From IMG/VR virus record IMGVR_UViG_3300032334_001259, positions 1 to 64,000 of that record: a stretch of 64,000 bases of DNA. The stretch is one strand, 5' to 3'. Made by a program: the position numbers and the translations under genes. Shown here one piece after another: positions 366-43,191 of the stretch. Numbering within the stretch: position 1 is the first letter of the stretch; the number at the start of each line of letters is the position of its first letter. The notes below the pieces were generated by a model. It had not been told where the DNA came from. It searched no databases and saw nothing but the letters and a program-made list of their open reading frames with translations.

Positions 366-379
366 TACCTCATAAAAGT

Positions 380-669
380 TGCAACTTTTCTGTTTCTAGG
401 TAAGTTGCCAACCCAAGAAATTATGCCGCTAGGCGCATTTCAACAGGTGCATTATCGTTTGCATCTATAACGTTTGTCAAAGTCTCTTCAAAGTCTTTAC
501 TGCACTTGTCGATCCTATTTCAGGCCCATAAAAGATACATCGGAAGGTAGACAGGGAAACTATTACACAAGTTCATCCGTGACTTGAAACCAATGTATCT
601 ATGGTGGACCTGGACGGTACCGCCCCGTCGTCCAACATGCTTATTTTACTCTGCGTCAACAACCGTGAC
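380..669 (-). ncRNA. ssrA: two-piece (circularly permuted) tmRNA, alphaproteobacterial type; outer ends approximate
   Basis: Acceptor piece ends GACGG-GGCGGTA-CCGTC-CAGGTCC-ACCA (CCA at 604-602). A 74-nt intervening segment (601-528) is closed by AGATACAT/ATGTATCT. Coding piece starts GGGCCTGAAATAGGATCGAC at 527, giving a 7-bp acceptor stem with G3:U. Tag ORF 462-421 reads ANDNAPVEMRLAA*. Confidence 0.95.
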
Positions 670-674
670 AAGAA

Positions 675-705
675 TATTTATAGCATCACTTATTGTTATT
701 GTCAA
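675..705 (-). promoter_or_regulatory. tmRNA promoter: sigma70 TTGACA-17-TATAAA whose -10 box is also a T4-type late TATAAATA
   Basis: Minus strand reads TTGACA ataacaataagtgatgc TATAAATA. Confidence 0.75.
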
Positions 706-840
706 GTTTAATTTCTTGTTGCTTACCACAATGTGGACAATACAGTTTTTTAGGCTCCCAATCGTCCATTACGGCGATACTAAACCACATTTTGCAAAAT
801 TCACAGGTAAAATGCCAAATTTTTTCTACGTTGGTTTGCA

Positions 841-11806: not shown

Positions 11807-12265
11807 CTATATTTTTAATTGTTTTGCGTTTACAGTATTAATCAGTTCTGCGGTTGGACTGATTGATAGGTTATTTACAACCACTCCATCCTGGTAATTC
11901 AGCGTATATAATCCACCCTCGCACCTGACTAAATTAAGGTATTCATGTTTTTTGCGGTCACGATAAACCTCTATTACCATACTATCCTTTTGTGAATAAG
12001 AAGTAAAGTATAAAGTGTAAAAAATACCCAAAGCACGTGCAGTATCGTCATATAAACCACTGCTTATAAGTGTCCACGGGTCAGGCCAATGACGACAATC
12101 ATCAAATTCAAGATAAGGGTCAGTTAATTTGCAATTCTGCCATGCTGTGGCAACAAGACGCAAGTGATCTTTGTCTATATTGCGCCTAAAATCACGCCAT
12201 TGTAGTATGTTTTCATGGGTTCTTGGCGTAATCCATTTAGAACATATCGAAGTATCTAATAGCAT
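11807..12265 (-). CDS. hypothetical phage protein
   Basis: 152-aa ORF in operon, WPDPW motif; start uncertain. Confidence 0.6.
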   Translation of the reverse strand: MLLDTSICSKWITPRTHENILQWRDFRRNIDKDHLRLVATAWQNCKLTDPYLEFDDCRHWPDPWTLISSGLYDDTARALGIFYTLYFTSYSQKDSMVIEVYRDRKKHEYLNLVRCEGGLYTLNYQDGVVVNNLSISPTAELINTVNAKQLKI

Positions 12266-15200
12266 AGTTGATAAGACCCGTACCTGTTGAATCGGTAGTG
12301 TATGTTACATCAGTGCCATTATAACCAAATGTAACACCAACATCACTACTGAATGTCCTATCATCTTCTATACTATATAAACCACCAGAAGTCAATGTAA
12401 ATTTAGCAAGTCCAGTGCAAACATTACTGCCTCTTGTAATTGTATATTGGAACTCAAATCCAAAGTTTTCACCAAATTCATTTAATCCAGTTACAAGAGC
12501 CGCAGTTGTATTATTTGCTAATGCTAAAGTTCTACCACGTTGGTAATTGATTGTTCCCATACGCAGACCGTAAGAATATACCCATTCAACAGCTTGTTCA
12601 ACTTCACTTACATATGGTATACCAGTGCTTGTGCTTGCCTGTGCTTCTGTTCTATCAAAACTATCACCAATACTTGCACAACCACTAATAGTAGTGTCAA
12701 AATATATGATTACATAAAATGGGTTTGCAACACCAGTGCTTTTGTTACCTACATCACGGTAATAATTACTTAAACTTAAGAAATTAGTGCTGTTTGTCAT
12801 ATAACAACCACTATTATAAATTAAGTCCATTGTGCTGTTGCTTATAGTAAAACCAATAGCACTTGTTCCAACAAAATACAAACCATGATAAAGATTACTG
12901 AATGTGCAACTATCTATTAAACCATTACTTGTATATTGACTACTTGGCAAATAAACACCTGTATGGAATCCATTGAATAAACAATCTATAATATTAACAT
13001 CACTTGCATATGCAAGAGCACGACCCAATAATTTTACACCAGCAGTTGTGCTACCATTTACTGGATCAGTTAATACAGTAACTGTGCTTGTGTTTGGTCC
13101 TTGGAAGCGAATATTGTCTAATGTAACACGTGTTGCACTGTCAATAACAATACCATCATTAAGACTTTGCAGTGTCATATCACTAATTGTAATATCTGTA
13201 GGTAATGCTGCACCATTCAAACCAATTAGATTTTGAATTTGTTGTAGGTCATCAGCGGTATACATTACCCAAGTAGTATATGGATATATGTAAGGATTTG
13301 CTGTTTGTGTAATTTGTGTATTATAAGTTCCTTCACCACGTAATCTTGCACGACTTGGAACATTAATACTACCGCTTACTATATAATTACCTGCTGGAAA
13401 CCATAAAACTTTATGTGCAGCAAGACTTGAAGTTCTGCAATATAGTTCATACATTGCACGGTTAATGGCTTCTGTGTCATCAGTAACACCATCACCTTTT
13501 GCACCAAAATCTTTAACACTTACGAAATCATCAAGTTTTTTCTGTAAAGAACGTTGTGTAATTGTTCCACCATAACTTAAACTTTGTGTAGTCCAAGTTT
13601 GTGCGTCAAGACTTGTACTGATATGACCGTCATCACCAATAGCATAATAGGTGCTACCAATATAACCCATACCACGATTGCTATAAGTTACTGATTGTGT
13701 TTCTTTTCTAAAATAATTGTATTGGCTTGTGCTGTAATAAAAGAAACCATATTGTCCACCGATAACATTAGTTGTGTTATTATCAGCAATATCATATAAA
13801 TCTGGTGCTAATGCACTACTACCAAAATAGATACTTGAATAGGTCCAAGTTACTGCATCTTGTGATTTGAGATATGTTAGACTTGTGTCACCACTTACAT
13901 AAAAATATGTTCCAATATAAGTAGAACCTGTAAAATTAGCAGTTGTAGTGGTTGTTTTTGTAAACCAACTGGTTCCATTTGTACTCGTAGCTATAACACC
14001 ATGATCACCAGTAACAATCCAATAATTTGTTGATGTCCCACCTGGTGGTGTAAATGTATAATATCTTACGCTATTCAAATCGCTCAATGAAACAGTAGCA
14101 CCAGTTGGATCAGTTGCACTATTTGCAATAGCACTACTCCAAGTTGTGCCGTCTGCACTGCTTACACCAACACCACTTGCACCAACTGCAATAGCCTTGA
14201 ATGTGCCACCACCTAAATCGGCAACAGCTACGCTACGCAATTCAACGCTTGTGCCACTACTACGTGCAGTCCAAGTTACGGCATTTGGACTTGTTAGTAT
14301 TGTTCCGTTAGCACCTACAGCTATCCATGTTGTAGTGCTTAATTTTGTAATACCAAGTAGATTTTGTGTAGTTCCACTTGTTTGTGCGGTAAATGTAGTT
14401 CCAGTTGTACTTGTTAAAATTACACCACTATCACCTACTACAACCCAAGTGGTTCCATCAAACCAAACTGCATTAAGACTTGTAGATACACCACTTGTTC
14501 TTGCTGTCCACGTAGCACCTGTTCCACTGGTATAGATTCCACCACTACCAGTTAAAACTGTGAATAAGCCAGCACCATTGTGATAGATATATTTGAAATT
14601 TTCAATAGCACTTGCAACAGTTGTGACACTACTTAAAGTTGTTCCAGTTGTGTTTTTATAAACATCGCCCCAACTTGTAAGTGACCAAACATTTGTTCCA
14701 TCATTTGTAACACTTACCAACCCATCAACAAGACTACGAGTCCAAGTTGAACCATCAGTGCTTACATAAACTTTATTATTTTCACATGTTGCAACAAAAG
14801 AATTGCCAGCAGTATTAGTAATATAACGCAAACCTAAAACATCATAAAAACCAACAGTTGTGACAGTCCAAGTGATAGCATCTGGACTTGTTATGATTGT
14901 TCCATTTGCGCCACCAGCAACAAATATACTGTTACCGTATGCTATGCTATAAAGTGCATCAGTTGTGCCTGTTGTTTGACTACTCCAAGTAACACCATTA
15001 TTACTTGTATAAACTTCACCAAGAGCAGTAACGAGAACAAACTTACTACTTGCATAAACAATTGCGTTGATATTTGTATATGAAACTGCACCGCTTGCTT
15101 GCCATACTGTTCCATTTGAACTATAAAGCACTGTTCCATTAGCACCAACTGCTACGAAATATCCACCACCATATGCAACATCAAGAAGATTTTGTGTAGT

Positions 15201-15569
15201 TCCACTTATAGTGCTATTCCATGTAGAACCATCAGTGCTTGTTAAAATATTTCCATTACTACCAACTACAACATATACTGAACCATTAGACGCAATTGCT
15301 TCATAAACTGCACGTGCATTACCAGTTTGTGGATTATAACCAGCATCACTGTTTTTAAAATCATATAAATTTGCTAAATTAAGGATGTCACTGTATTCAG
15401 TGAGAATTTCTGTATTACCAGTTTGTGGCGCACCATCACTTACAAGACCGTTACCAATAAAAAGGCGGCGTTCATCGACAGCATAACCTATTTCTGCCTT
15501 TGCAAGTTGTGGTAAATTTTCAAAAATTCCGCTACGATGTTGTATTCTTGAGATTTGGACAATGCTCAT
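12237..15569 (-). CDS. tailspike/receptor-binding protein: Mtd-like N-terminus, BNR/Asp-box propeller repeats, pectate-lyase-like beta-helix
   Basis: IQHRSG...LPQLAKAEIGYAVDERRLFIG; many S(T/P)DG.TW repeats; SVKDFGAKGDGVTDDTEAINRA; FPAGNY. Confidence 0.8.
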   Translation of the reverse strand: MSIVQISRIQHRSGIFENLPQLAKAEIGYAVDERRLFIGNGLVSDGAPQTGNTEILTEYSDILNLANLYDFKNSDAGYNPQTGNARAVYEAIASNGSVYVVVGSNGNILTSTDGSTWNSTISGTTQNLLDVAYGGGYFVAVGANGTVLYSSNGTVWQASGAVSYTNINAIVYASSKFVLVTALGEVYTSNNGVTWSSQTTGTTDALYSIAYGNSIFVAGGANGTIITSPDAITWTVTTVGFYDVLGLRYITNTAGNSFVATCENNKVYVSTDGSTWTRSLVDGLVSVTNDGTNVWSLTSWGDVYKNTTGTTLSSVTTVASAIENFKYIYHNGAGLFTVLTGSGGIYTSGTGATWTARTSGVSTSLNAVWFDGTTWVVVGDSGVILTSTTGTTFTAQTSGTTQNLLGITKLSTTTWIAVGANGTILTSPNAVTWTARSSGTSVELRSVAVADLGGGTFKAIAVGASGVGVSSADGTTWSSAIANSATDPTGATVSLSDLNSVRYYTFTPPGGTSTNYWIVTGDHGVIATSTNGTSWFTKTTTTTANFTGSTYIGTYFYVSGDTSLTYLKSQDAVTWTYSSIYFGSSALAPDLYDIADNNTTNVIGGQYGFFYYSTSQYNYFRKETQSVTYSNRGMGYIGSTYYAIGDDGHISTSLDAQTWTTQSLSYGGTITQRSLQKKLDDFVSVKDFGAKGDGVTDDTEAINRAMYELYCRTSSLAAHKVLWFPAGNYIVSGSINVPSRARLRGEGTYNTQITQTANPYIYPYTTWVMYTADDLQQIQNLIGLNGAALPTDITISDMTLQSLNDGIVIDSATRVTLDNIRFQGPNTSTVTVLTDPVNGSTTAGVKLLGRALAYASDVNIIDCLFNGFHTGVYLPSSQYTSNGLIDSCTFSNLYHGLYFVGTSAIGFTISNSTMDLIYNSGCYMTNSTNFLSLSNYYRDVGNKSTGVANPFYVIIYFDTTISGCASIGDSFDRTEAQASTSTGIPYVSEVEQAVEWVYSYGLRMGTINYQRGRTLALANNTTAALVTGLNEFGENFGFEFQYTITRGSNVCTGLAKFTLTSGGLYSIEDDRTFSSDVGVTFGYNGTDVTYTTDSTGTGLINYAIRYFDMF

Positions 15570-21749: not shown

Positions 21750-22763
21750 TTAAACAGTTTCTAATTTACCACAGACTTGATCACATTGGATTAATCTACC
21801 GTTTTCATAGCTATCTTTTGTCCATGCACTTTCAACGGTATTAAACCATTTTATGCACGTTTCTAAGTCATATTCATGTAAACTATTATTTTTTACTAAT
21901 GGTTTAATTTGACGATTAATAAATCCATTAAATCCTTGCTTATAAGTTAAAGGATTAAACCCCATATAACAACATGGATAAACTAATCCATTTGCAGCAA
22001 TATAAATTGAATTATGGTTTTTTGTGAAACAATCATGGTATAGACCTACAATATATGGTTTATAAGAGTAAGTTTTGTTTGGATCTTGCTGAAAGCGAAT
22101 TATATCTTCAATATTTGTAAATCCATCATGTTTACCCATAACATGAACTAATTTACCACTGCGATCAAATACTGGACCAGTATTGCGACCATGATCTATT
22201 AAACAAAATTCTTTAAATCCTAATTTTTTAGAAAGTTTTTCTGCTTCTTCAATTTGGTGTAAATTATGCTCAAAACGTATCATCTTCCAAATAGCAACAC
22301 CGCCAGCATCTATGTATGTCTTTGCATTTTGAAGTATTTTATTAAAATTTGTATCTTGACGATACAGTGCGTGAGTATCTTCTAATCCATCTAAACAAAA
22401 TTGAATTTCAGTATTTGAAAATTTACCAAGATCGTGCCAAAAATCTGCATTTCTTGCGCTGCCATTTGTACTTATATCTATTATTAATTTTGAATAACAC
22501 GATTTAAAATAATCTAATATTTGTATAGATTCTAAATTAGCAGTAAAATCACCAAAGTTTCCATTAACTAGTATGCCCCGTTGAAGTTGGTTAATAAATT
22601 GTGACGAGAATGATTTTTTAATTAAATCAAGTGATAAATTTGTTTCTTCATAACCACTATTATATGGATAACCAAATAAGTTTCTTGGACAAAGAGGACA
22701 TCTTGCATTACATAGTGAACTAAATTCCATATGTAAATGTTTAATATTTTGATAAGTTATCAT
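21750..22763 (-). CDS. radical SAM protein with SPASM/twitch-like C-terminus
   Basis: CNARCPLC, STNGS, DG...YR, GLVYPCC; start set at MITYQN. Confidence 0.85.
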   Translation of the reverse strand: MITYQNIKHLHMEFSSLCNARCPLCPRNLFGYPYNSGYEETNLSLDLIKKSFSSQFINQLQRGILVNGNFGDFTANLESIQILDYFKSCYSKLIIDISTNGSARNADFWHDLGKFSNTEIQFCLDGLEDTHALYRQDTNFNKILQNAKTYIDAGGVAIWKMIRFEHNLHQIEEAEKLSKKLGFKEFCLIDHGRNTGPVFDRSGKLVHVMGKHDGFTNIEDIIRFQQDPNKTYSYKPYIVGLYHDCFTKNHNSIYIAANGLVYPCCYMGFNPLTYKQGFNGFINRQIKPLVKNNSLHEYDLETCIKWFNTVESAWTKDSYENGRLIQCDQVCGKLETV

Positions 22764-22767
22764 GTTT

Positions 22768-23565
22768 TTAACAATTTTTAAGTTTTTTAATAGCATTTCC
22801 AACTGTGGTATAAAAATCTTTATTATACAAAAATTCAGTTTTAGATATTTGGCTTAATTTATTATTTGCTTTTTCAATAATTTCATCTCTATACAATAAA
22901 AAATTTTCATTAGATATTGATTTGGGATTTATAATTTCTAAATTTTTAGGAGCAAAAAGCAAGTGTAATCTTTTTTTTCTTGATGCATTAAATGCACTAT
23001 GCAACACACCCGTATTTAATTTATATAATTTTTTAGTATCATTCATCACATAAGCAGCATTACCTTCTATAAAAAAACAATCTGGAATAGTGGTAATAAT
23101 TGGTAAATGATAGGCTACAAAACTTGAATCAATATGAAAATCATACATTGTATGAGGAAACATAGTAGCACATTTGATCATACGAAAATCTATTTTAGTA
23201 ATTGCTTGAATTTCTTCTAATGTTTCTTTTATATATTGAAATTTAGTATCATCTAATATGGAAATAAAACTATCAGTATTTTTTTCATAATCAATATATT
23301 GGGTTTCATTAAAATTTTCTAAACGCTGAACTAATTCTACGACTGTCATCAATTCATCATGAATTACATCATCCAAGTCTCTTACTGGACCTTCTAATTG
23401 TTTTTTTAAAGATAAAGCAGTATCGTGTGTTTTTAAATTTATTTTTTTAGTAGATGTATATTTTTTAACTTCTTCAAGTAGTACAACAATTTGATTATGG
23501 AATTTTGTCCAATTTATATCAGAGTCTTTTAAATCAATAAAATTAGGTAATTCTGGAATGGTCAT
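22768..23565 (-). CDS. AspH-like 2OG-Fe(II) oxygenase domain protein
   Basis: HID...HLPI...LNTGVLHSAFN...RLHL pattern. Confidence 0.65.
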   Translation of the reverse strand: MTIPELPNFIDLKDSDINWTKFHNQIVVLLEEVKKYTSTKKINLKTHDTALSLKKQLEGPVRDLDDVIHDELMTVVELVQRLENFNETQYIDYEKNTDSFISILDDTKFQYIKETLEEIQAITKIDFRMIKCATMFPHTMYDFHIDSSFVAYHLPIITTIPDCFFIEGNAAYVMNDTKKLYKLNTGVLHSAFNASRKKRLHLLFAPKNLEIINPKSISNENFLLYRDEIIEKANNKLSQISKTEFLYNKDFYTTVGNAIKKLKNC

Positions 23566-23639
23566 TGTTTTTTATTTAAGATATTTTTTAAATGATAAAT
23601 TATTATATTATTGGCACATTTAGGCATAAAGGGCAATCA

Positions 23640-25340
23640 ATGAAACTACCAGAAAACGCACAGGCACAATGCGAACAATTACTAAAACAATTTAGACGAC
23701 AAATACCAGATGATGCGGCGTATAGTGACCGACTTGTTGAAGAAATAGAAATCATACTGGGTCTACGCTTTACAGAATACTTCTTACAAATCCGTGAAAT
23801 ATTAGATATGACTAATGACTTACCACACATGACACGTGGTAGTGCAGGCAGTAGTCTTGTTTGTTGGGCATTAGGTATTACAGATGTTGATCCTATAAAA
23901 TGGGATATACCACTTTCACGATTTTTAAATCCGCACCGTGATGATTTACCAGACATTGATATAGACTATCCACATTGGGCACAAACTACAGTTATGGAAC
24001 GTATATTCAAACGTTGGCCTGGTAAAAGTGCAAGAATTAGTAACTATGTTACATTTAAAGAAAAAAGTGCCAAGCGTGAAGCAGCAAGACGACTTGGTGC
24101 AAAAGGAAAATTACCTCGTAACTTCAAATACGATGATCTTGACATTGACATAGGGGAAGCTATTCGTATTGAAAAGAAGTTGCTTGGTAAGAAACGAGCC
24201 ATCAGCAAACACTGTGGTGGCATACTTGTGTTCAAGCATAATCTACCTAAAAGTCTTATAAATGCTGATAATCAAATACTATTAGACAAACATGAAGTAG
24301 AAGACCTTGAACACTTAAAAGTTGATATACTTGCTAATCGTGGATTAAGTCAACTTTATGAAATAGAACCAAATATGGGTTTAGAAGATTATCCTGATTA
24401 TGATGAAGCAACTGTAAAACTTCTTTGTAATGGTGATGTGCTAGGCGTAACACAAGGTGAATCACCAGCAATGCGGCGATTGTTTCGTGCAATACAGCCA
24501 AAGTCACGTAGTGATTGCGTATTTGCTACTGCGCTTATACGTCCTGTTGCAACTACTGGTCGCCAAAAAGCCAGTTTCTTTCACGATTGGACAGAACAGC
24601 GTTTAGAAGAAAGTATTGTTTATGAAGATGATGCTATCAAAAAGATAAGCAAACTTATTGGTTGTGATATCTATGAAGCAGATATGTATCGCCGTGCATT
24701 TGCAAAAAAGAATGAAGAAAAAGTGTATGAGTTTATGCACCGTATGGGAACACACCCAAACAAGACAGAAATTGTAGATGAACTTTATCAACTTGGAAAC
24801 TTTGGACTATGCCGTGCACATGCTGTAAATCTTGGGCGATTGATTTGGGCATTAGCATATCAAAAAGCACATAACCCAAAACCATTTTGGGCAGCATATC
24901 TTAAACACTGTGAAGGCAGTTATCGTCGTTGGGTCTATAAATGTGAAGCCAAACGTGCTGGTTGGGATTTACGTGATCTAGGTTATAATTATAGTTTGTT
25001 AAATGACCCTATATATGAATATAGAAAATATGGATGGTGGGGTGATGCCGATTTTTTACAAGGTTTTTATTGTGCTAATCAATATCTTGACCGTTTTGAA
25101 TTTGCTGGTCTTGTTGCCAATGGTCGTGTATTTAAGGGAGAAGGCGGGAAATACATTACCTTTCTTACACTCGGAATTGACAACGGAAAATATATTGACT
25201 TATTGGTCAAGGGACCAGTAGCATATCATGATTATGATGTTGTATGCGGCGTAGGTAAAGTTAAAACAAGTAATGGCAGTCAGTATATTGAATGTCAAAA
25301 TGTGCGGACATTTAAGCTAGAAAAATTTATTTCTGCTTAA
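23640..25340 (+). CDS. dnaE: compact DNA polymerase III alpha (DnaE) homologue lacking the PHP domain
   Basis: RGSAGSSLV, RFLNP.R..LPDIDID, KHCGG, LKVDIL, Q.ES..M, ALIRP, RAHA, C-terminal OB-like segment; start at MKLPEN. Confidence 0.9.
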   Translation: MKLPENAQAQCEQLLKQFRRQIPDDAAYSDRLVEEIEIILGLRFTEYFLQIREILDMTNDLPHMTRGSAGSSLVCWALGITDVDPIKWDIPLSRFLNPHRDDLPDIDIDYPHWAQTTVMERIFKRWPGKSARISNYVTFKEKSAKREAARRLGAKGKLPRNFKYDDLDIDIGEAIRIEKKLLGKKRAISKHCGGILVFKHNLPKSLINADNQILLDKHEVEDLEHLKVDILANRGLSQLYEIEPNMGLEDYPDYDEATVKLLCNGDVLGVTQGESPAMRRLFRAIQPKSRSDCVFATALIRPVATTGRQKASFFHDWTEQRLEESIVYEDDAIKKISKLIGCDIYEADMYRRAFAKKNEEKVYEFMHRMGTHPNKTEIVDELYQLGNFGLCRAHAVNLGRLIWALAYQKAHNPKPFWAAYLKHCEGSYRRWVYKCEAKRAGWDLRDLGYNYSLLNDPIYEYRKYGWWGDADFLQGFYCANQYLDRFEFAGLVANGRVFKGEGGKYITFLTLGIDNGKYIDLLVKGPVAYHDYDVVCGVGKVKTSNGSQYIECQNVRTFKLEKFISA

Positions 25341-26730
25341 GATTGTTTAACATTTGTCGTAGCGCACTGCTGTTTACATCAGCCTGTATTTTACCAGGTT
25401 GATCTTCTACCACTGCTTCTGTTGATGGCTTAACATTACTGCCACCCTTGATGCTTGCAAAGATACTACTGCTTTGTTTCTTAAATTGTTGATAATCTGG
25501 ATCTTCTGCCAAATCACGAATACGCAAACTATCAATATCAAATTCAAGTTCAATCTTCTGTCCAACACCACTACTACTACGAGTCTTCATAAGTTGTAGT
25601 TGATACTTGCCATGTTCACGCATACTACGACTTGTAAAGATACCAAACAAATTATCCGCAGTGTTAATCTTACTGATACCACCACTGATATGACTGTGGT
25701 CAAATTCAACTTCTTCTACCGATGCACGGTTTAACTGTGAAGCAGTTACAAGAAGTATGTCTAATTCTTTTGCAAAGTTACGAATTTCTTCACTGACATA
25801 CTTGTCTTTAACGAACAGATCGCTTGGACTTACTTTTGCACTTACTGGCATAAGAAGATCAAGGTAATCAATCATAACAAAGTCTACACGACGACCTGTG
25901 CGGATTTGAAGTTCTTTAATATAAGCACGAACGTCATTGATATTGCTTTGTGCTGGCATATATTTGATTTGTAATCTGCCACTTTTCTTACCAAGCATCT
26001 TAACTTTAACTTCAATATCTTCAATACTCTTAAAGATATCTCGTGACGGTGTATTGGTAAGCATACCATCAATACGCATGGCAGTAAGTTCTTCACTTAA
26101 TTCAAGTGTAATGTATACGCCATTAAGACCAGCCAATATCCAATTACATGCAATATTCTGCATGAACAATGATTTACCACTACCAGAACCACCAGCAAAG
26201 ATATTCAACTCACCACGGTTAAATCCACCAAATAACTTCTTATCAAGTGTAGTCCAACCACTACTTGTTTGACCATTATTGTCTTTAATTTTATTCAATC
26301 GTGCAATAGGATCAAGGAAATAATCAGTTCCAAGGTCTTTGGTTAAACTTATTTGTACTGCATCTTTAATAATTTTTTCAACAGGATCAAAGTCACCCTT
26401 CTCAAGCATATCTGCGGCTTTAAGAATTGCACGTTCAAGTTCTTTTTGTTTAGTAAAACCTTCAAATTCTTCCAAGAACCAACTTGTATGGTCGTCGGTC
26501 ATACCAGGTATTGGTTGGAAAGTATTGCTGGTGGCAGCATTAATTTGTTCTACTAATGGCATAATAGTATGCTTGTCACAATGTTCTTTAATGAACCTTG
26601 CAGCACTTTGTAAACTACGGTCAAAGTTGTTTGGATTGAAAATGTTTTGGACACGCACATAGCTTTGTGGATCACTTAACATCATTTCAATGAATAGTTT
26701 TTGAACTTGGGTATCATAAGATTTAGACAT
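25327..26730 (-). CDS. replicative DnaB-family helicase (T4 gp41-like)
   Basis: GGSGSGKS Walker A, ITLELSE, IDYLDL, TASQLNR, MKTR. Confidence 0.93.
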   Translation of the reverse strand: MSKSYDTQVQKLFIEMMLSDPQSYVRVQNIFNPNNFDRSLQSAARFIKEHCDKHTIMPLVEQINAATSNTFQPIPGMTDDHTSWFLEEFEGFTKQKELERAILKAADMLEKGDFDPVEKIIKDAVQISLTKDLGTDYFLDPIARLNKIKDNNGQTSSGWTTLDKKLFGGFNRGELNIFAGGSGSGKSLFMQNIACNWILAGLNGVYITLELSEELTAMRIDGMLTNTPSRDIFKSIEDIEVKVKMLGKKSGRLQIKYMPAQSNINDVRAYIKELQIRTGRRVDFVMIDYLDLLMPVSAKVSPSDLFVKDKYVSEEIRNFAKELDILLVTASQLNRASVEEVEFDHSHISGGISKINTADNLFGIFTSRSMREHGKYQLQLMKTRSSSGVGQKIELEFDIDSLRIRDLAEDPDYQQFKKQSSSIFASIKGGSNVKPSTEAVVEDQPGKIQADVNSSALRQMLNNLKQK

Positions 26731-26811
26731 AACACTATTGTATCATAAAAACTTTAAATTTTCTATTAGTTTTTTATTTAAACCGCACAATAGTAGTAGG
26801 TAAATATTACG

Positions 26812-27987
26812 ATGATTACATCTGTTGAAGGCGCAGTTTCGTATAATAATAAATTATCTTTTTTGATTGATTGGGAAATTACCTTAAAATGTAATTTGGA
26901 CTGTGGATATTGTGACAAAGGTATTTACGGTGGACATGAAAACAGTATTCCTCATCCAAATTTAGAAAAATGTTTAAAAACTTTAGATTTTTTATATGAA
27001 TATGTTGACATTTATATGCAAGCAAAGAAAAATTTACAAAGTGCCGTTTTGAATGTATATGGTGGAGAAAGTTTATATCATCCTGACATTGTTACAATTT
27101 TAAAACAAAGCAAAGAAAAACATCAAAAATATAATTGGAATTTGACAATTACTACAACTACAAATTTAATTTTAAGTCAAAAAATATTAAATCAGATATT
27201 AAATTATATAGATGAATTTACGTGTAGCTTTCATTCTGAAAACACAGACAAACAATTAGAAATTTTTAAAGAAAATTTGTTATTTTTAAAAAGCAATAAT
27301 AAAAATTTTAAAGTTGTAATTCTAATGAATCCTAAAAAATGGGAATATTGTTTAGATATGATTTCTTTTTGTCAAGAAAACAATATGAGATTTTTAATAA
27401 GACAGCTTGATCAACCATTAGCCAAAGCTCCCGATAATTATAATTCAGAACTTAAAAAAAAAGAAACTTGGTATTATAATGTTTATCTTGATCGTCCAGA
27501 AAATCATGAACCCAAATACACATATTCTCAAGAACAAATATCTTGGTTTGAAGAGGAATATAATGGTAGAAATAAAAACACTGTAACTTCTATTGACAAA
27601 AATAATAATTTAAATGAACAAGGTAGATGCTGCTGTGGTGGTCGTTTATTATCTACAAATCAAAATTATAAAAATAAAGTAAGTTTTGTTAATAACAATT
27701 TTTTTGATTGGTATTGCTCAGTAAATTATTTTTTTGTTTTTGTGAAACAAGTTACAGAAGAAATATTTGTTAATAAAGATTGTATGATGAATTTTTCTGG
27801 AAATATCGGTCCTATTGGTAATTTAAAAAATTATAATGAACTTTTAAATTTTACAAAAACAAATTTAGAAAATAAAACATTACCTGTAATAAAATGTGCC
27901 AAACAACTTTGCAGATGTGGTTTATGTGCACCAAAAGCAAAAGATAAAGAAATATACTTAAAAATTATGAACAAATATATAAATTAA
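26812..27987 (+). CDS. radical SAM protein
   Basis: CNLDCGYC, YGGE, TTN, SFH, C-terminal Cys cluster; very AT-rich. Confidence 0.85.
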   Translation: MITSVEGAVSYNNKLSFLIDWEITLKCNLDCGYCDKGIYGGHENSIPHPNLEKCLKTLDFLYEYVDIYMQAKKNLQSAVLNVYGGESLYHPDIVTILKQSKEKHQKYNWNLTITTTTNLILSQKILNQILNYIDEFTCSFHSENTDKQLEIFKENLLFLKSNNKNFKVVILMNPKKWEYCLDMISFCQENNMRFLIRQLDQPLAKAPDNYNSELKKKETWYYNVYLDRPENHEPKYTYSQEQISWFEEEYNGRNKNTVTSIDKNNNLNEQGRCCCGGRLLSTNQNYKNKVSFVNNNFFDWYCSVNYFFVFVKQVTEEIFVNKDCMMNFSGNIGPIGNLKNYNELLNFTKTNLENKTLPVIKCAKQLCRCGLCAPKAKDKEIYLKIMNKYIN

Positions 27988-28982
27988 AACCATCTTTTTG
28001 TTTGTAATTTTATTTTTAAGCTAGATTGTTCAACACTACTTAAAATGCTTTTCATAGTAAATGTATGTCCATACTTGGCTACCGCATCTGCAGTATCTTT
28101 AATACCACTTTCCCAATCAGGAAATGCCACACTCCAACCATATCTTAGGGCAGCATCAACCATTGCGTGACCAGCTTTATCACGATCAGGGACAACAATA
28201 ATATCACGGTCAAGCGTTTCAATAACATCAGCTTGTATATCATTAATTTCATTACTACAAATTGCAAGTGCACCAATGGCAACTGCATCAAGTAATCCTT
28301 CAACTACAATACAGAACTTTGCGTTCTTGTGTTGTTTATCATATCCCCATATCATGTTGCTTGGATAGTTTGAAAAGTATTTGATCTTTTTCTTACCATC
28401 TTCAAATAACCGTCCACTGAAACCCATGGGCTTATTGTTCCAAGTAAATGGAACTAACACACGGTTACGCAATGCCGCATCATTAGTCCAATAAAACTCA
28501 TGCAACTTATCGCCAAAACCACGAGTATCAAGATAATTGATAGCATTTTCAAGACTGTTATAATCTGCTTCATTGATATATCCATCATTTAACCAATTTG
28601 TAATTGGACGACCAGGACAAGGATCACGTGGTTCATAGGTAGGTAACTCACGTGGTTCAACTACAACTGGCTTGGTGGTCTCTTGGCTGATAGCAAATAA
28701 TGCAAGACGACCTATAAGGTCTTCACCCATACCAAGCCAGTTCATCCAACGCCGCATTTTATAACTTAAACGACGACCAGGTTGCCAACTACAAGTGTAA
28801 TGACAATTAAAACAATGATAATTGATACCGCCTTCTGGTGTTTGATGAACGCCACCACGACCACGAGTATCGGCTTCATGTCCTAAATGCTGACAGCATG
28901 GTGCGTTAAAGCTAATCCATCCACTTGGAGTAGCTTTCTTTTTCCATGGCAAGTGTGCCAGTAGTTGGTTGGTAATTTCCAT
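27984..28982 (-). CDS. DNA primase (T4 gp61-like)
   Basis: Zn-ribbon (PCC, HCFNC), TOPRIM VEGLLDA and PDRD, KD. Confidence 0.9.
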   Translation of the reverse strand: MEITNQLLAHLPWKKKATPSGWISFNAPCCQHLGHEADTRGRGGVHQTPEGGINYHCFNCHYTCSWQPGRRLSYKMRRWMNWLGMGEDLIGRLALFAISQETTKPVVVEPRELPTYEPRDPCPGRPITNWLNDGYINEADYNSLENAINYLDTRGFGDKLHEFYWTNDAALRNRVLVPFTWNNKPMGFSGRLFEDGKKKIKYFSNYPSNMIWGYDKQHKNAKFCIVVEGLLDAVAIGALAICSNEINDIQADVIETLDRDIIVVPDRDKAGHAMVDAALRYGWSVAFPDWESGIKDTADAVAKYGHTFTMKSILSSVEQSSLKIKLQTKRWF

Positions 28983-28988
28983 TACATT

Positions 28989-29017
28989 AATATAACAGAT
29001 TTATGGTAATCTGTCAA
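28989..29017 (-). promoter_or_regulatory. sigma70 promoter TTGACA-17-TATATT (leaderless) for primase
   Basis: -10 box ends 6 nt before ATG 28982. Confidence 0.7.
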
Positions 29018-29802
29018 GGACGATAATAAATGTAATTCATCTGACCGCTAATTTGGCTTACTTTAAATCTTACAGCACGATATTTGCCTTGGAAATTAAA
29101 GTAATTTGTGCCACTGACATTAGCACAGTTAGCATAACTTATTGTAGTAAAGCTGTTAGCATCAACCACACTCTTTGCGTCCAAACTTGCTTGTAACTGG
29201 ATATTGCCAGTAAAAGCATTTGCATTATATTGTACGGTCTGATAAACAGCACTACCACGAACATAATTTGCTGTCAAGAAGCTACTGCTATAAGCAACAT
29301 TTACATAGTTTGTATCGCCGTCATTACTATAGGTAAAATTGTTAGCAAGATAGCTTGAAGTAAACTGTGGATAAACACCATCGTTTATTCTAGCTTGACC
29401 CTGTGCCTGATAGTTGTCATCGCTGTAAACAATTTCTTGTTCACCACTACCATTTGTAGCAACAATGCTGTAATTATATAAACCAGCGTTTATATTATCA
29501 AGTAAACTGCCTTCAATAAGACAAGTTGCTACACCATCACGTGTATAAACAAGGTCAAGATTGCGTGAAAATACTAATTCTTTTGTAGTGCTATCAATTA
29601 AATTAAATAAAACTGTGCTTTGTAAAAGGCTCGCAGGTTTTTGGTCATTATTTTTAATAACGAACTTAAATCTATTATCTACACCTTTATAGATTTGTAA
29701 TGGTTTGGCGTAAAACAACTGATTCTCCCTGTGTAATGCAAGGTCGCTGTTCTTTACAACAGTTATAATTTGTGGATATAAATAACCTGAAATTTGCTGC
29801 AA
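29014..29802 (-). CDS. hypothetical, probable virion/baseplate protein
   Basis: TTG start, TAAATA upstream, beta-rich, IYKGVDN motif. Confidence 0.6.
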   Translation of the reverse strand: MQQISGYLYPQIITVVKNSDLALHRENQLFYAKPLQIYKGVDNRFKFVIKNNDQKPASLLQSTVLFNLIDSTTKELVFSRNLDLVYTRDGVATCLIEGSLLDNINAGLYNYSIVATNGSGEQEIVYSDDNYQAQGQARINDGVYPQFTSSYLANNFTYSNDGDTNYVNVAYSSSFLTANYVRGSAVYQTVQYNANAFTGNIQLQASLDAKSVVDANSFTTISYANCANVSGTNYFNFQGKYRAVRFKVSQISGQMNYIYYRP

Positions 29803-29828
29803 CTAATGGACCCTTTTTAATATTTATT

Positions 29829-30203
29829 ATGAGTTTTTCACTGGAACAAATGCTTGAACAATATCCCTTCTTAAGTTACATAAAATATCCCACTGCGGAC
29901 TTTATTGGAATTATACAAAATTTTGATGGCGACATTGTTTCCATGTATGCCTTTAATAAATTAAAAACCGAAGAAGATAAACGTGGTTTTTTAGAAGCAG
30001 CAGAAATATGGTGGTGGGAAAGTAATCGGTTGATACCAATCAATATTTTTTTAAAGCATGGTTGGGACAAATATCGTTATAGTACAGTAACACTTACAAC
30101 AAAAGATATAAGAGAGCAGTGTGGTCACATAGTAAGCATTGCAAAACTTGCAGAACGTAGAACAAAACGCAGAGTTGTTCAGTTAGTTAAACGACTCGGT
30201 TAA
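29829..30203 (+). CDS. conserved phage hypothetical protein
   Basis: YPFLS, WWWESNRLIPINIFL; start set at MSFSLE. Confidence 0.65.
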   Translation: MSFSLEQMLEQYPFLSYIKYPTADFIGIIQNFDGDIVSMYAFNKLKTEEDKRGFLEAAEIWWWESNRLIPINIFLKHGWDKYRYSTVTLTTKDIREQCGHIVSIAKLAERRTKRRVVQLVKRLG

Positions 30204-30743
30204 CAAATTCATATGAACCATAACTAATTGTGCATAGCCATAAGCATGCGCTTTCTTAAAATAATAACCTTCATTTGGTTTAATCCAAATCTCATCAGCT
30301 ATTTCTCGCCATCGTTTTCCGATAAGGTGTCGTTTGGATGGACGAATGATTGCCAATACCATAGCCAACATATCCATTGAAGTAGGATGATGTTGTTGTA
30401 AGACATCAAAATGATTTGATAAATGAATAAGTTTGGCAACAAAATCCCTTTCTTTTAATAGTTCCCACTGTGGTTCACGTTTACAGAGTTCGTCAAGATG
30501 CTCGTTACTGCAAACTGAATTATAAACGTGAACATTTAGTAGGTCTAACTTCATATAACCTAATTCTTCTGCCGCATCATAATCAACATTGCTTAAACCA
30601 GTAAGTGGGTTTTGGGGTATGGGATTGACATAGACTCCAGTGTTGTGCTTGACAACGTTACCGTCACGGCGTATAGACGCAGGCACGTGCTTGATAAGTT
30701 TCAAGATATCCTCACGGCTTCCGAAATCTATGTCAATATCCAT
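30183..30743 (-). CDS. mini-DnaE: stand-alone palm/fingers fragment of a C-family polymerase
   Basis: MDIDIDF, KHNTGVYV, GYMKLDLL, LAIIRP and FKKAHAYGYA are colinear with DnaE motifs. Confidence 0.8.
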   Translation of the reverse strand: MDIDIDFGSREDILKLIKHVPASIRRDGNVVKHNTGVYVNPIPQNPLTGLSNVDYDAAEELGYMKLDLLNVHVYNSVCSNEHLDELCKREPQWELLKERDFVAKLIHLSNHFDVLQQHHPTSMDMLAMVLAIIRPSKRHLIGKRWREIADEIWIKPNEGYYFKKAHAYGYAQLVMVHMNLLTESFN

Positions 30744-30995
30744 TTATGCCCATCTCATTAAAAATAAACTACGTTCTTCATCATTAATAAACCCTAACAT
30801 CGTACCGTATTGTGACCACTTTGTCAAGGAAAAATTGCACCATGCCTTAATATCTTCTTCATTCTTTACCCAGAATGATGGATCAGCGATAATAAGAAAA
30901 CTTTTGTTTATTATCAAATCAAGCGCATAGACATTATCAGATAAGTCACGAATATCTTTCAATGATGCGGTACCAACTACAAATCGTGCCGCCAT
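30744..30995 (-). CDS. hypothetical protein
   Basis: 83-aa ORF, coupled to neighbours. Confidence 0.6.
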   Translation of the reverse strand: MAARFVVGTASLKDIRDLSDNVYALDLIINKSFLIIADPSFWVKNEEDIKAWCNFSLTKWSQYGTMLGFINDEERSLFLMRWA

Positions 30996-31729
30996 TAGCA
31001 GCCTGCTTTTTCTAATATCTGCCTTGCAAGTTCTGCTTCTGCAGCGTGTATTTTTAATTTACGTTCCCAAAATGGTGGGTCAATCCATGGCAAAGCAAGA
31101 GTAACTTGTTCTTCGTTTAATTCACCAAGTTTTTCCATGCCAGCATCACAGCAATAAATTACCCAAGGACTAATGCGACCATGCACGATATGATTTATTA
31201 AACGACTGGTACTAATCTTCTTAAAATAATCACTAAACTCTATGGTGCCATCTTTGGTTTCTTCTGCCCAACGTTGCATTGTTTCAATACTACGTTCCAT
31301 TGCTTCATCATATTTTTCTGTTCTGACATATTCCCAAAGATATGATTCATAAATTTTATCACGTGTCCAACTATCAAGTTTGTATTTGCTTGTAAGCACG
31401 TAATCTATAAATTTATTAACATTAATTGCATCAATGGCATGGCAATGACGACCAAACTTTACAAAACCTTGATACAATGAACTGCTACAAAAATCCTCAT
31501 ATGTTTTAAGTTTAGCACTGCCTTGGGTTAATTCATAAAACCGCATCCAAGCAATATAACCAATACGCACACCCTTTTCATTCTTTTGGTTTTCACGTCT
31601 TTTTGGTTCACATTGGTGAACAACAAGACTGCTCTCACGAGTGAAAGCAAGTCCACAATGCTTGCAGACATGCTCACCAGGTTTTACCTCTTTAGCGGCT
31701 TCACGGGCAATCTTACGTAATTCGTTCAT
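30995..31729 (-). CDS. zinc-finger-containing conserved phage protein
   Basis: CKHC...H.C zinc-finger-like motif. Confidence 0.6.
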   Translation of the reverse strand: MNELRKIAREAAKEVKPGEHVCKHCGLAFTRESSLVVHQCEPKRRENQKNEKGVRIGYIAWMRFYELTQGSAKLKTYEDFCSSSLYQGFVKFGRHCHAIDAINVNKFIDYVLTSKYKLDSWTRDKIYESYLWEYVRTEKYDEAMERSIETMQRWAEETKDGTIEFSDYFKKISTSRLINHIVHGRISPWVIYCCDAGMEKLGELNEEQVTLALPWIDPPFWERKLKIHAAEAELARQILEKAGC

Positions 31730-41100: not shown

Positions 41101-41174
41101 TGGTGGAGAATATCAGAGTCGAACTGATGAATCCGCCTTGCAAAGGCGGCGGTTTTCCACTAGCCTAATTCCCC
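41101..41174 (-). tRNA. tRNA-Ala(UGC), CCA encoded
   Basis: GGGGAAT/ATTCTCC stem with G3:U70; anticodon arm CCGCC-TTTGCAA-GGCGG; T arm ATCAG-TTCGACT-CTGAT; TTGACA promoter at 41213. Confidence 0.95.
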
Positions 41175-42393: not shown

Positions 42394-43191
42394 ATGAAAA
42401 TTTTAATCACAGGAAGCAACGGGTTTATTGGCAGTTATTTGTGCAAATATTATACCGAATATGGTCATCAAGTTATACAATTACATCGTGGTGTTTGTGA
42501 TTTAGAAGATGCTGAAAGTGTTAAAAATTTCTTTACTGCAAATCCATGTAACGCAGTAATTCATACTGCATTATGGGGTCGTGAATTAGTTCGCAGTGAT
42601 AATCCAGAAGTATATGAACGAAACTGGAAAATTTGGCAAAATCTATTAAGTAATCGTGATAAGTTTCAACAATTTATTAATCTTGGAACTGGCTTGGAGT
42701 ATGATAGTGGACGAGACATCAAATATGCTGATGAAGATGATGCCTTATATGTGGAGCCTACTGCTCCTTATGATCGTGTTAAAAACGATATATCTCGTGC
42801 TATTCATAATCTACCATCTTTTTATACACTTCTTTTATTCGGAGTAGCACATTATACAGAAGGTAATCGTTTCTTTAATCGTTTGCTGAATGAACCAACA
42901 TTTACAATCAATGAAGATCGTGAATATGATTATTTTAATTTAGAAGATTTACCAACCGTAATAGATTTAATTTTAGATAATAAAATGCAACATAAAGCAA
43001 TAAACTGTGTTTATGAGCAGAAATATAAATTAAGTCAACTTGCAAAATTATTCTGTGATATTAAAATGCTTGATTATAAAAAAGTGCAAGTATTAGACAC
43101 TAGTAATAAAAATTATACTGGAAGCAATGACAGATTAAAAAGTTATAATCTGCCACTACTTGGTTTAGAATTAGCCATGCTTCGGTTTTAA
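42394..43191 (+). CDS. NAD-dependent epimerase/reductase (extended SDR)
   Basis: ITGSNGFIG, YxxxK (YDRVK). Confidence 0.8.
   Translation: MKILITGSNGFIGSYLCKYYTEYGHQVIQLHRGVCDLEDAESVKNFFTANPCNAVIHTALWGRELVRSDNPEVYERNWKIWQNLLSNRDKFQQFINLGTGLEYDSGRDIKYADEDDALYVEPTAPYDRVKNDISRAIHNLPSFYTLLLFGVAHYTEGNRFFNRLLNEPTFTINEDREYDYFNLEDLPTVIDLILDNKMQHKAINCVYEQKYKLSQLAKLFCDIKMLDYKKVQVLDTSNKNYTGSNDRLKSYNLPLLGLELAMLRF

What the first reader, a model, noticed from the sequence alone, without database searches (positions are those of the whole stretch)
23640..25340. Second, PHP-less 566-aa DnaE inserted antisense next to the helicase
Seen: complete palm motifs (RGS, PDIDID, KVD), shortened thumb and fingers, an apparent loss of the HhH/clamp-binding region, and a terminal OB-like fold. 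There is no PHP domain and no room for one upstream. The gene is on the opposite strand and overlaps the helicase 3' end by 14 bp. Known: T4-like replisomes (gp41/gp61/gp32) normally use a family B polymerase. Inference: an accessory, non-proofreading (possibly error-prone or lesion-bypass) polymerase. Two differently reduced DnaEs within 7 kb is unusual.
Basis: partly seen in the sequence, partly recalled or inferred. Interest (0 to 1): 0.62.

Follow-up and report, generated by a model that had tools for sequence, protein, structure and literature searches.

The report
PHP-less auxiliary DnaE polymerase in jumbo phage
A complete 338-kb freshwater jumbo phage that already has a proofreading T4-type family B replicase also carries a strongly conserved, stripped-down bacterial-type (DnaE) DNA polymerase with no proofreading or clamp-binding parts, most likely an extra, dispensable polymerase whose job is still unknown.

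Summary
Window 23640-25340 (+) encodes a 566-aa DnaE-type family C polymerase. It has palm, a short thumb, fingers and a terminal OB fold. It has no PHP domain, no HhH/beta-binding domain and no tau-binding tail. Its 3' end overlaps the 3' end of the DnaB-type helicase gene by 14 bp.

The window is the start of a complete 338,435-bp phage genome. That genome encodes an 887-aa family B polymerase with an exonuclease domain. Six-frame searches found no PHP, DnaQ-type, Y-family, PolA, DnaN or HhH domain. The DnaE is therefore an additional, exonuclease-free polymerase.

It is not a recent insertion. The DnaE(+)/helicase(-)/primase(-) order is kept in 28 of the 30 related contigs, down to 68% identity. 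dN/dS is 0.03-0.06, and well over a hundred 90%-identity clusters of 555-579 aa proteins form one family.

It is dispensable. One close relative has it deleted. A complete 322-kb relative and all cultured relatives lack it.

Its N-terminal half lies at about 257 kb.

An error-prone or lesion-bypass role is untested. I rate this a new variant of a known kind, of moderate interest.

The parts
23640..25340 (+). Gene for the 566-aa PHP-less DnaE-type family C DNA polymerase. The longest ORF starts at 23592, but homologues support a start at 23640.
23835..23843 (+). RGS motif (residues 66-68), the nucleotide-binding loop of the palm. Invariant in the family.
23952..23966 (+). DIDID (D105, D107, D109), the metal-binding catalytic aspartates. 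They align to PDIDIDF of Mtb and Taq DnaE.
24324..24326 (+). D229 of the KVD motif, the third catalytic aspartate (LKVDIL aligns to LKMDFL of solved DnaE).
24342..25034 (+). Fingers domain (residues about 235-465), shortened. It includes the YRRAFAKK and CRAHAVN motifs that align to the RRAMGKK and NKSHAAAY motifs of DnaE.
25083..25325 (+). C-terminal OB fold (residues 482-562). It follows the fingers after a linker of about 17 residues that replaces the HhH/beta-binding domain.
23566..23639 (.). 74-bp AT-rich spacer between the DnaE gene and the divergent hydroxylase-like gene (22768-23565, minus strand). There is no room for a PHP-coding extension.
25327..26730 (-). DnaB-family replicative helicase (467 aa). 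It is convergent with the DnaE gene and the 3' ends overlap by 14 bp.
27984..28982 (-). DnaG-type primase (332 aa). It lies directly upstream of the helicase in most relatives.
26812..27987 (+). Radical SAM gene between helicase and primase. It is variable cargo, absent from nearly all related loci.
30183..30743 (-). C-terminal half (186 aa, starting MDIDIDF) of the split minimal Pol III alpha. The N-terminal half (171 aa) is outside the window, at about 257.4-258.0 kb of the genome (L002:1513-2028, minus strand).

Best explanation
The gene encodes a catalytically competent DNA polymerase of the bacterial DnaE type. It is reduced to the polymerase core (palm, short thumb, shortened fingers) plus an OB fold that binds single-stranded DNA. 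It has no exonuclease of its own and no PHP domain. It lacks the double-strand/clamp-binding HhH domain and the tau-binding tail.

It is a lineage-specific auxiliary polymerase of a clade of aquatic T4-like ('group 2.2') jumbo phages. The core replisome of these phages is a proofreading family B polymerase with a DnaB-type helicase, a DnaG-type primase and an RFC-type clamp loader, plus the split minimal Pol III alpha.

Shown here: the fold, intact active-site motifs, the missing domains, the presence of the family B replicase, strong purifying selection, conserved position next to helicase-primase, and natural dispensability.

Inferred, not shown: the enzyme does short-patch synthesis on single-stranded template at or behind the fork. 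This could be primer extension, gap filling, or synthesis where the proofreading replicase stalls. The family B polymerase would do the bulk synthesis. Whether it uses the phage clamp is unknown.
For: DnaE identity:
- Pfam E=1e-40 and 9e-15.
- A profile of the family hits solved DnaE chains at E=5e-37 to 1e-33.
- Structural Z is 15-25 to DnaE and PolC cores and about 8 to SSB/PriB OB folds.
- Catalytic and dNTP-binding motifs are invariant in 27 homologues.

The genome has an 887-aa family B polymerase:
- It carries PF03104 exonuclease and PF00136 polymerase domains.
- A clamp loader is present.
- Six-frame searches found no PHP, RNase_T/DnaQ, Y-family, DnaN, PolA or HHH_6 domain.

Conservation:
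- dN/dS is 0.034-0.063. The helicase is 0.024-0.10 and the primase 0.09-0.27.
- The 120 best hits are all 469-579 aa (nearly all 555-579) at 63-96% identity.
- DnaE(+)/helicase(-), with primase(-) beyond it where the contig reaches that far, is found in 28 of the 30 related viral contigs and in a marine MAG contig.

Accessory status:
- L035 keeps only the last 62 or so codons, behind a stop codon.
- A complete 322-kb relative has the family B polymerase and the split Pol III half but no match to this protein.
- About 95 cultured jumbo phages carry the split Pol III halves, yet no cultured phage has a full-length homologue of the 566-aa protein.
- A distant 484-kb uncultured phage has a 574-aa homologue (37% identity) together with a family B polymerase and no PHP.
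Against: - No biochemical or expression data exist. No RNA sequencing run holds this sequence.
- The sliding clamp of this phage was not identified, so clamp use cannot be judged.
- The very strong conservation, tighter than for the primase, is unusual for a dispensable gene and could mean a more central role in this clade.
- The deletion in L035 comes from a single 23-kb metagenomic contig and could be a defective genome or a misassembly.
- The specific role (primer extension, gap filling or lesion tolerance) rests on analogy only.
Confidence: 0.72

Rival explanations
1. A dedicated error-prone or lesion-bypass polymerase, analogous to DnaE2/ImuC. It would take over when the proofreading family B replicase stalls at damage, for example UV lesions in surface waters.
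For: There is no exonuclease or PHP domain. The gene is accessory and dispensable. The family is found in lake, pond and Tara ocean metagenomes, that is in sunlit waters. No photolyase or Y-family polymerase in the genome could do that job instead.
Against: No ImuB/Y-family-like or ImuA-like partner was detected. Bacterial DnaE2 keeps the PHP and beta-binding domains, which are missing here. The score to the DnaE2 model (160 bits, cut-off 939) is no better than to the DnaE3 model (163) or DnaE1 model (155). Sequence conservation is as tight as for the replicative helicase.
Confidence: 0.25
2. A primer-extension polymerase coupled to helicase-primase.
For: The gene sits tail-to-tail with the helicase-primase pair in the related loci, down to 68% identity. 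The OB fold suits single-stranded template. The missing clamp-binding domain suits short, distributive synthesis. The best-scoring equivalog model, and the best non-family tblastn hits (Listeria records, 30% identity), are Firmicutes-type DnaE, but only by small margins.
Against: T4-type family B polymerases extend RNA primers themselves (established knowledge of T4). Related phages replicate without this gene. In the distant 484-kb phage the homologue is not next to a helicase. No interaction was tested. Gene adjacency on opposite strands is weak evidence.
Confidence: 0.2
3. It is the main replicase of this clade, and the family B polymerase has a secondary role.
For: DnaE-type enzymes are replicases in bacteria and in many actinophages. 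The gene is more conserved than the primase. It lies in the replication gene cluster.
Against: It has no proofreading and no clamp-binding domain. It is deleted in L035 and absent from a complete relative and from cultured relatives, all of which keep the family B polymerase. The family B polymerase has all exonuclease and polymerase motifs by eye, and its sequence ends in NLFEFI, which resembles a clamp-binding tail.
Confidence: 0.06
4. It is a non-catalytic or decaying remnant of a full-length DnaE.
For: Three domains of canonical DnaE are missing.
Against: All catalytic residues are invariant. dN/dS is 0.03-0.06. Length is uniform at 555-579 aa across well over a hundred 90%-identity clusters.
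Confidence: 0.02

Closest known systems
Bacterial DnaE (Pol III alpha; solved for E. coli, Thermus aquaticus, M. tuberculosis)
   Same: The same palm-thumb-fingers fold (Z 15-25). The same RGS, DxD and KxD catalytic motifs and finger motifs. An OB fold follows the polymerase core.
   Different: No PHP domain, no HhH/beta-binding domain and no tau-binding C-terminal domain. The core is about 100 residues shorter. Scores to every NCBIfam DnaE equivalog (84-167 bits) are far below their cut-offs of 434-1806 bits.
Split minimal Pol III alpha of group 2.2 jumbo phages (Iyer et al. 2021, PMC7824862)
   Same: A phage-borne, PHP-less family C polymerase that accompanies a family B replicase. It is encoded in this same genome as the 171-aa and 186-aa proteins.
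   Different: The 566-aa protein is a single chain with thumb, fuller fingers and an OB fold. It is much closer to bacterial-type DnaE (120-130 bits) than to the split halves (22-26 bits, E 1e-2 to 1e-3). Iyer et al. state that phages with the split version have none of the other Pol III domains. This clade is an exception.
DnaE2 / ImuC error-prone polymerase
   Same: A second, non-essential DnaE-type polymerase that does not rely on proofreading.
   Different: DnaE2 keeps the PHP and beta-binding domains and works with ImuA and ImuB. None of these is present here.
Full-length and other reduced DnaE-like polymerases of phages (phrog_405; actinophages, Bacillus phage G; two-part enzymes of Pseudomonas phage PA5 and Corynebacterium phage P1201)
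   Same: Best PHROG match is phrog_405, E=1.5e-63, profile positions 341-848 of 1190. BFVD contains phage DnaE-like proteins from 460 to 1350 aa, so truncation and splitting of phage DnaE is common.
   Different: In those phages the DnaE-like enzyme is usually the only replicase. Here it co-exists with a family B polymerase and a split Pol III. Identity is only 13-30%.
574-aa homologue in the uncultured 484-kb phage LR756508.1
   Same: The same full-length architecture at 37% identity. It also co-occurs with a family B polymerase in a genome with no PHP domain.
   Different: It is not adjacent to a helicase, and that genome has no detectable split Pol III C-terminal half.

Membership tests
Family C DNA polymerase, DnaE type (catalytic core) | Pol III alpha palm/NTP-binding domain (PF07733) above the gathering score | tested here: met
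   140.3 bits against a cut-off of 23.9, E=1.2e-40
Family C DNA polymerase, DnaE type (catalytic core) | Fingers domain (PF17657) | tested here: met
   54.9 bits against a cut-off of 22. Covers profile positions 19-157 of 166
Family C DNA polymerase, DnaE type (catalytic core) | Three catalytic aspartates and the RGS nucleotide-binding loop | tested here: met
   R66-G67-S68, D105, D107 and D229 are invariant in 27 homologues and align to the corresponding motifs of Mtb and Taq DnaE
Family C DNA polymerase, DnaE type (catalytic core) | Three-dimensional similarity to solved Pol III alpha | tested here: met
   Z 25.1 to 5lew (382 residues aligned), 24.4 to 3e0d and 18-19 to E. coli structures. 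The model has mean pLDDT 72
Canonical bacterial DnaE (DnaE1/DnaE3 architecture) | N-terminal PHP domain | tested here: not met
   No PF02811 in the protein or in the six-frame genome search at E<=10. All homologues start at the same position
Canonical bacterial DnaE (DnaE1/DnaE3 architecture) | HhH / beta-clamp-binding domain (PF14579) | tested here: not met
   No Pfam hit in the protein or the genome. In the model only about 17 residues separate the fingers from the OB fold
Canonical bacterial DnaE (DnaE1/DnaE3 architecture) | OB fold after the polymerase core | tested here: met
   Residues 482-562 align to SSB/PriB with Z about 8 and rmsd 1.7 A. The Taq alignment extends to residue 1127
Canonical bacterial DnaE (DnaE1/DnaE3 architecture) | Score above the NCBIfam equivalog cut-offs for DnaE1 or DnaE3 | tested here: not met
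   155 bits against 1002 (PRK05673) and 163 against 1806 (PRK06920)
DnaE2 / ImuC mutasome polymerase | Score above the NF004225 cut-off, and presence of an ImuB (Y-family-like) partner | tested here: not met
   160 bits against a cut-off of 939. No IMS-domain gene in the genome
PolC-type family C polymerase | Match to PolC models | tested here: not met
   29 and 26 bits against cut-offs of 1043 and 873
Split minimal Pol III alpha of group 2.2 jumbo phages | Two separate small proteins split between the RGS helix and the DxD motif, with specific sequence similarity to phrog_11778 and the Rak2/121Q homologues | tested here: not met
   The 566-aa protein is a single chain, and its similarity to the two halves is marginal (E 0.012 and 8e-4). 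The window ORF 30183-30743 and the 171-aa ORF at 257 kb do meet this definition. Their predicted complex scores 0.91 (ipSAE) in each of three runs, and the best of 3 controls scores 0.00. The tool's pass mark was reached by 58 of 80 solved complexes and 2 of 110 mismatched pairs in its calibration. The runs agree in at least 93% of contacts, and the partner's pLDDT is at least 91.
T4-like (group 2.2) jumbo phage replication module (genomic context) | Family B polymerase with exonuclease, DnaB-type helicase, DnaG-type primase, RFC-type clamp loader | tested here: met
   The sliding clamp itself was not identified

The most novel reading that the evidence does not exclude
This clade of aquatic jumbo phages would run a replisome with three polymerases and a division of labour. 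The PHP-less DnaE, positioned with helicase-primase, would extend primers or restart synthesis on single-stranded template. It would then hand over to the proofreading family B polymerase. That would be a viral parallel to the DnaE/PolC and Pol alpha/Pol delta arrangements, combining bacterial-type and archaeo-eukaryotic-type polymerases at one fork.
Probability: 0.15. Interest if true: 0.7.

Novelty: new variant of a known kind. Interest (0 to 1): 0.45.

Why it matters
Family C polymerases are thought of as the bacterial replicase, with PHP, clamp-binding and tau-binding modules around the core. This protein is a natural single-chain DnaE reduced to the polymerase core plus an OB fold. It is abundant and under strong selection.

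It sits in genomes that also carry a family B replicase and, in this clade, the split minimal Pol III. It gives a compact enzyme for asking what the DnaE core can do without its accessory domains. It also gives a test case for how phage replisomes combine polymerases of different families.

It corrects a published generalisation, namely that phages with the split minimal Pol III have no other Pol III domains. It is not a new kind of system, and the finding is so far only comparative genomics.

Tried and rejected
- Megablast of window 22000-31000 against the phage collection found no match.
- The scan of bacterial and archaeal genomes found one hit, a 42-kb contig binned into a marine Legionellales MAG. 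That MAG also holds the phage-type 887-aa family B polymerase and a homologue of the split Pol III half. I read this as phage contigs binned into the MAG, not as host evidence.
- The promoter and terminator scan around the gene gave counts no higher than shuffled sequence, so no transcription signal can be claimed.
- Public sequencing runs included no RNA run holding the stretch, only DNA runs from freshwater, pond and lake samples. Expression could not be checked, and read laying was not used.
- The sliding clamp was not found. Pfam models for the gp45 N and C domains and for DnaN found nothing, and PHROG scans of genes around the clamp loader and the family B polymerase found no clamp. Clamp binding could therefore not be tested. 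The family's C-termini show a weak [KR][LI][DE][KRQ][FYW][LI]-like pattern, which I do not interpret.
- The single complex-prediction job went to the two halves of the split Pol III, whose binding the report does claim. No partner of the 566-aa DnaE (helicase, primase, clamp) was tested.
- No photolyase and no PolA were found.
- I did not build a DnaE1/2/3/PolC tree, because labelled reference sequences were not at hand. The NCBIfam scores are a proxy only.
- A literature search for PHP-less phage DnaE found nothing specific.
Full report
**What is there**

The window is the first 64 kb of a single-contig virus record of 338,435 bp. The record has direct terminal repeats and is rated complete. 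Nearly all genes in this part of the genome lie on the minus strand.

The ORF at 23592-25340 (+) has 582 codons. Its homologues are 555-579 aa and all begin at the position of M17.

The gene ends 14 bp inside the 3' end of the convergent DnaB-type helicase gene at 25327-26730 (-). Upstream, a 74-bp AT-rich spacer separates it from a divergently transcribed hydroxylase-like gene, which leaves no space for a PHP-coding extension.

**Identity and architecture**

- Pfam finds the Pol III alpha palm domain (E=1.2e-40) and the finger domain (E=8.8e-15), and nothing else.
- A profile of 27 family members hits solved DnaE chains at E=5e-37 to 1e-33 and PolC only at 1e-4.
- In those alignments the RGS loop, the DIDID metal-binding aspartates, the KVD aspartate and the finger motifs (YRRAFAKK, CRAHAVN) all line up with their DnaE counterparts. 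They are invariant in the family.
- The AlphaFold2 model has mean pLDDT 72 and pTM 0.67. Residues 5-465 superpose on the palm-thumb-fingers of Mtb DnaE1 (312-868), Taq (from 303) and E. coli (283-840), with Z 15-25.
- Residues 482-562 form an OB fold (SSB/PriB, Z about 8, rmsd 1.7 A, 78 residues). In full-length Taq this region aligns to the polymerase's own OB domain.
- Between the fingers and the OB fold there are only about 17 residues. Canonical DnaE has the HhH/beta-binding domain there.
- The catalytic core is about 100 residues shorter than in the solved enzymes.

**Is there a PHP subunit or a gp43 elsewhere?**

Six-frame searches of the whole genome gave these results.

- No PHP domain at E<=10.
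- No RNase_T/DnaQ exonuclease.
- No Y-family polymerase.
- No DnaN.
- No PolA.
- No HHH_6 domain.

They did find an 887-aa family B polymerase at about 222.4-225.1 kb. It carries the PF03104 exonuclease and PF00136 polymerase domains. By eye, all Exo I-III and Pol A/B/C motifs are present. An RFC-type clamp loader lies at about 255.7 kb.

Neither condition is met, so the DnaE is an additional, exonuclease-free polymerase.

**The 'second reduced DnaE'**

The 186-aa ORF at 30183-30743 (-) starts MDIDIDF, which is the catalytic DxD motif. It continues with the third-aspartate motif and the finger motifs, and it matches phrog_11778 at E=1e-60.

A 171-aa ORF at about 257.4-258.0 kb ends just after the RGS loop and the following helix. 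It carries the only other PF07733 signal in the genome.

These two ORFs are the halves of the 'minimal, split DNA polymerase III alpha' that Iyer et al. (Viruses 2021, PMC7824862) described as a hallmark of group 2.2 jumbo phages, which also have a family B polymerase. Each half has homologues in about 95 cultured jumbo phages, including RaK2, 121Q, GAP32, PAC2, Phosso and SCTP-2. The split point is conserved in metagenomic relatives.

A complex prediction supports binding of the two halves. The ipSAE score was 0.91 in each of three runs, and the best of 3 controls scored 0.00. The tool's pass mark was reached by 58 of 80 solved complexes and 2 of 110 mismatched pairs in its calibration. The three runs agree in at least 93% of their contacts, and the partner's pLDDT is at least 91. 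Solved DnaE is a single chain, so this pass may reflect memory of that fold. It shows likeness rather than proving binding.

This part of the finding is already known. It is one split enzyme, not a second whole polymerase.

**How the 566-aa protein relates to known groups**

- It is far closer to bacterial-type DnaE (120-130 bits to PDB chains; phrog_405 at 216 bits) than to the split halves in the same genome (22-26 bits).
- Against NCBIfam it scores about equally to the DnaE3 model (163 bits), the DnaE2 model (160) and the DnaE1 model (155). All are far below their cut-offs. It scores almost nothing to PolC.
- It is therefore of the DnaE type but belongs to none of the curated bacterial groups. 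I did not build a tree.
- Iyer et al. state that phages with the split version contain none of the other Pol III domains. This clade is an exception, because it adds thumb, fuller fingers and an OB fold in a third polymerase gene.

**Distribution and selection**

- The word search found 2035 related proteins. The best 120 clusters are 469-579 aa (nearly all 555-579) at 63-96% identity. They come from JGI, ENA, Tara and NCBI metagenomes and sit on contigs of up to about 306 kb. Their only names are automatic 'DNA polymerase III alpha subunit' labels.
- DNA runs that hold related sequence are from lakes, ponds and other fresh water.
- No cultured phage in the collection has a full-length homologue. 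The only full-length match is a 574-aa ORF (37% identity) in the uncultured 484-kb phage LR756508.1. That phage also has a family B polymerase and no PHP domain, but no split Pol III half.
- Of the 30 related viral contigs, 28 show the DnaE on the plus strand facing the helicase on the minus strand, down to 68% protein identity. A marine MAG contig shows the same arrangement. The primase follows the helicase wherever the contig extends far enough.
- The radical SAM gene between helicase and primase in this window is variable cargo. Some relatives carry another plus-strand gene between the DnaE and the helicase.
- Pairwise dN/dS for the DnaE is 0.034-0.063. The helicase is 0.024-0.10 and the primase 0.09-0.27.
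- The GC content of the gene region (37%) is that of the genome. The flanking radical SAM and hydroxylase genes are AT-rich, at 28% GC.

The gene is thus an old, well-integrated resident of this clade and not a fresh insertion.

**Dispensability**

- In contig L035 the space between the radical SAM gene and the helicase holds only the last 62 or so codons of the DnaE, preceded by a stop codon. The neighbouring genes are intact.
- A complete 322-kb relative with terminal repeats has a family B polymerase and a 50%-identical split Pol III half but no match to the 566-aa protein.
- The cultured group 2.2 phages also lack it.

The replication core is therefore the family B polymerase plus the split Pol III, and the 566-aa DnaE is a clade-specific addition.

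**Mechanism**

What is shown is an intact active site on a DnaE core with an OB fold, no exonuclease and no known clamp-binding or double-strand-binding module.

From established knowledge of DnaE, the HhH/beta-binding domain provides processivity, and PHP or epsilon provides proofreading. This predicts a distributive, non-proofreading DNA polymerase that works on single-stranded template.

I commit to an auxiliary role beside the family B replicase (confidence about 0.7). Within that role, the sub-roles are not separable with the present data. The main-replicase and dead-remnant readings are unlikely (0.06 and 0.02).

**Verdict**

The feature is real and correctly described. The 'two DnaEs' point is explained by a published split enzyme. 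The 566-aa PHP-less DnaE is an uncharacterised but abundant variant of a known enzyme family in an unusual genomic setting with three polymerases. It is a new variant of a known kind, and I score interest at 0.45.

Noticed in passing
window 30183-30743 (-) and genome C1 about 257.4-258.0 kb (L002:1513-2028, minus strand): These are the two halves of the split minimal Pol III alpha of group 2.2 jumbo phages (Iyer et al. 2021). The split falls exactly between the RGS helix and the DxD motif, and the halves lie 227 kb apart. The predicted complex scores 0.91 (ipSAE); the best of 3 controls scores 0.00. The tool's pass mark was reached by 58 of 80 solved complexes and 2 of 110 mismatched pairs.
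   Followed up: yes
L035:2504-2794 (IMGVR_UViG_3300032265_002095): A natural deletion variant. Only the last 62 or so codons of the DnaE remain, behind a stop codon, between an intact radical SAM gene and an intact helicase gene.
   Followed up: yes
window 23640-25340 compared with 25327-26730, against loci L007-L033: Synonymous divergence of the DnaE (dS 0.36-0.87) is lower than that of the adjacent helicase in all but one locus pair (0.50-1.55; about half to a third in the more divergent pairs). This could mean a more recent spread of the gene by recombination, or constraint on synonymous sites.
   Followed up: partly
window 377-709 (-): An Alphaproteobacteria-type permuted tmRNA (Rfam RF01849, 108 bits; tag peptide ANDNAPVEMRLAA by ARAGORN). 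This hints at an alphaproteobacterial host. A tRNA-Ala(TGC) lies at 41101-41174 (-).
   Followed up: partly
window 21750-23565 (-) and 26812-27987 (+): AT-rich islands (28% GC) flank the DnaE-helicase pair. They carry two radical SAM genes and an Asp/Arg-hydroxylase-like gene. The plus-strand radical SAM gene is absent from nearly all related loci, so it is variable cargo.
   Followed up: partly
window 42394-43191 (+) and 59016-59522 (+): The other plus-strand genes in this mostly minus-strand region are accessory or mobile types: an NAD-dependent epimerase and an HNH endonuclease.
   Followed up: no
window 12237-15569 (-): An 1110-aa protein with many short Gly/Thr/Ser-rich repeats of the 'S.DG..W' type and a C-terminal region that looks like a beta-helix. 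It is probably a tail fibre or receptor-binding protein. It was not analysed.
   Followed up: no
L037 (PBLX01000009.1, MAG Legionellales bacterium SP228) and other contigs of G001: This marine MAG contains contigs of a related jumbo phage: a DnaE at 68-70% identity, helicase, primase, a split Pol III half and an 887-aa family B polymerase. This is most likely a binning artefact and is not reliable host evidence.
   Followed up: partly
LR756508.1 (W01) 260.6-266.9 kb: In the 484-kb uncultured phage the family B polymerase signal is spread over two ORFs of 1022 and 625 aa. This could be an intein or an insertion. It was not examined.
   Followed up: no
genome C1 about 256.6-257.0 kb (L038:10623-11012, minus strand): A Cpn10/GroES-like co-chaperonin gene lies between the N-terminal half of the split Pol III and the clamp loader.
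   Followed up: no
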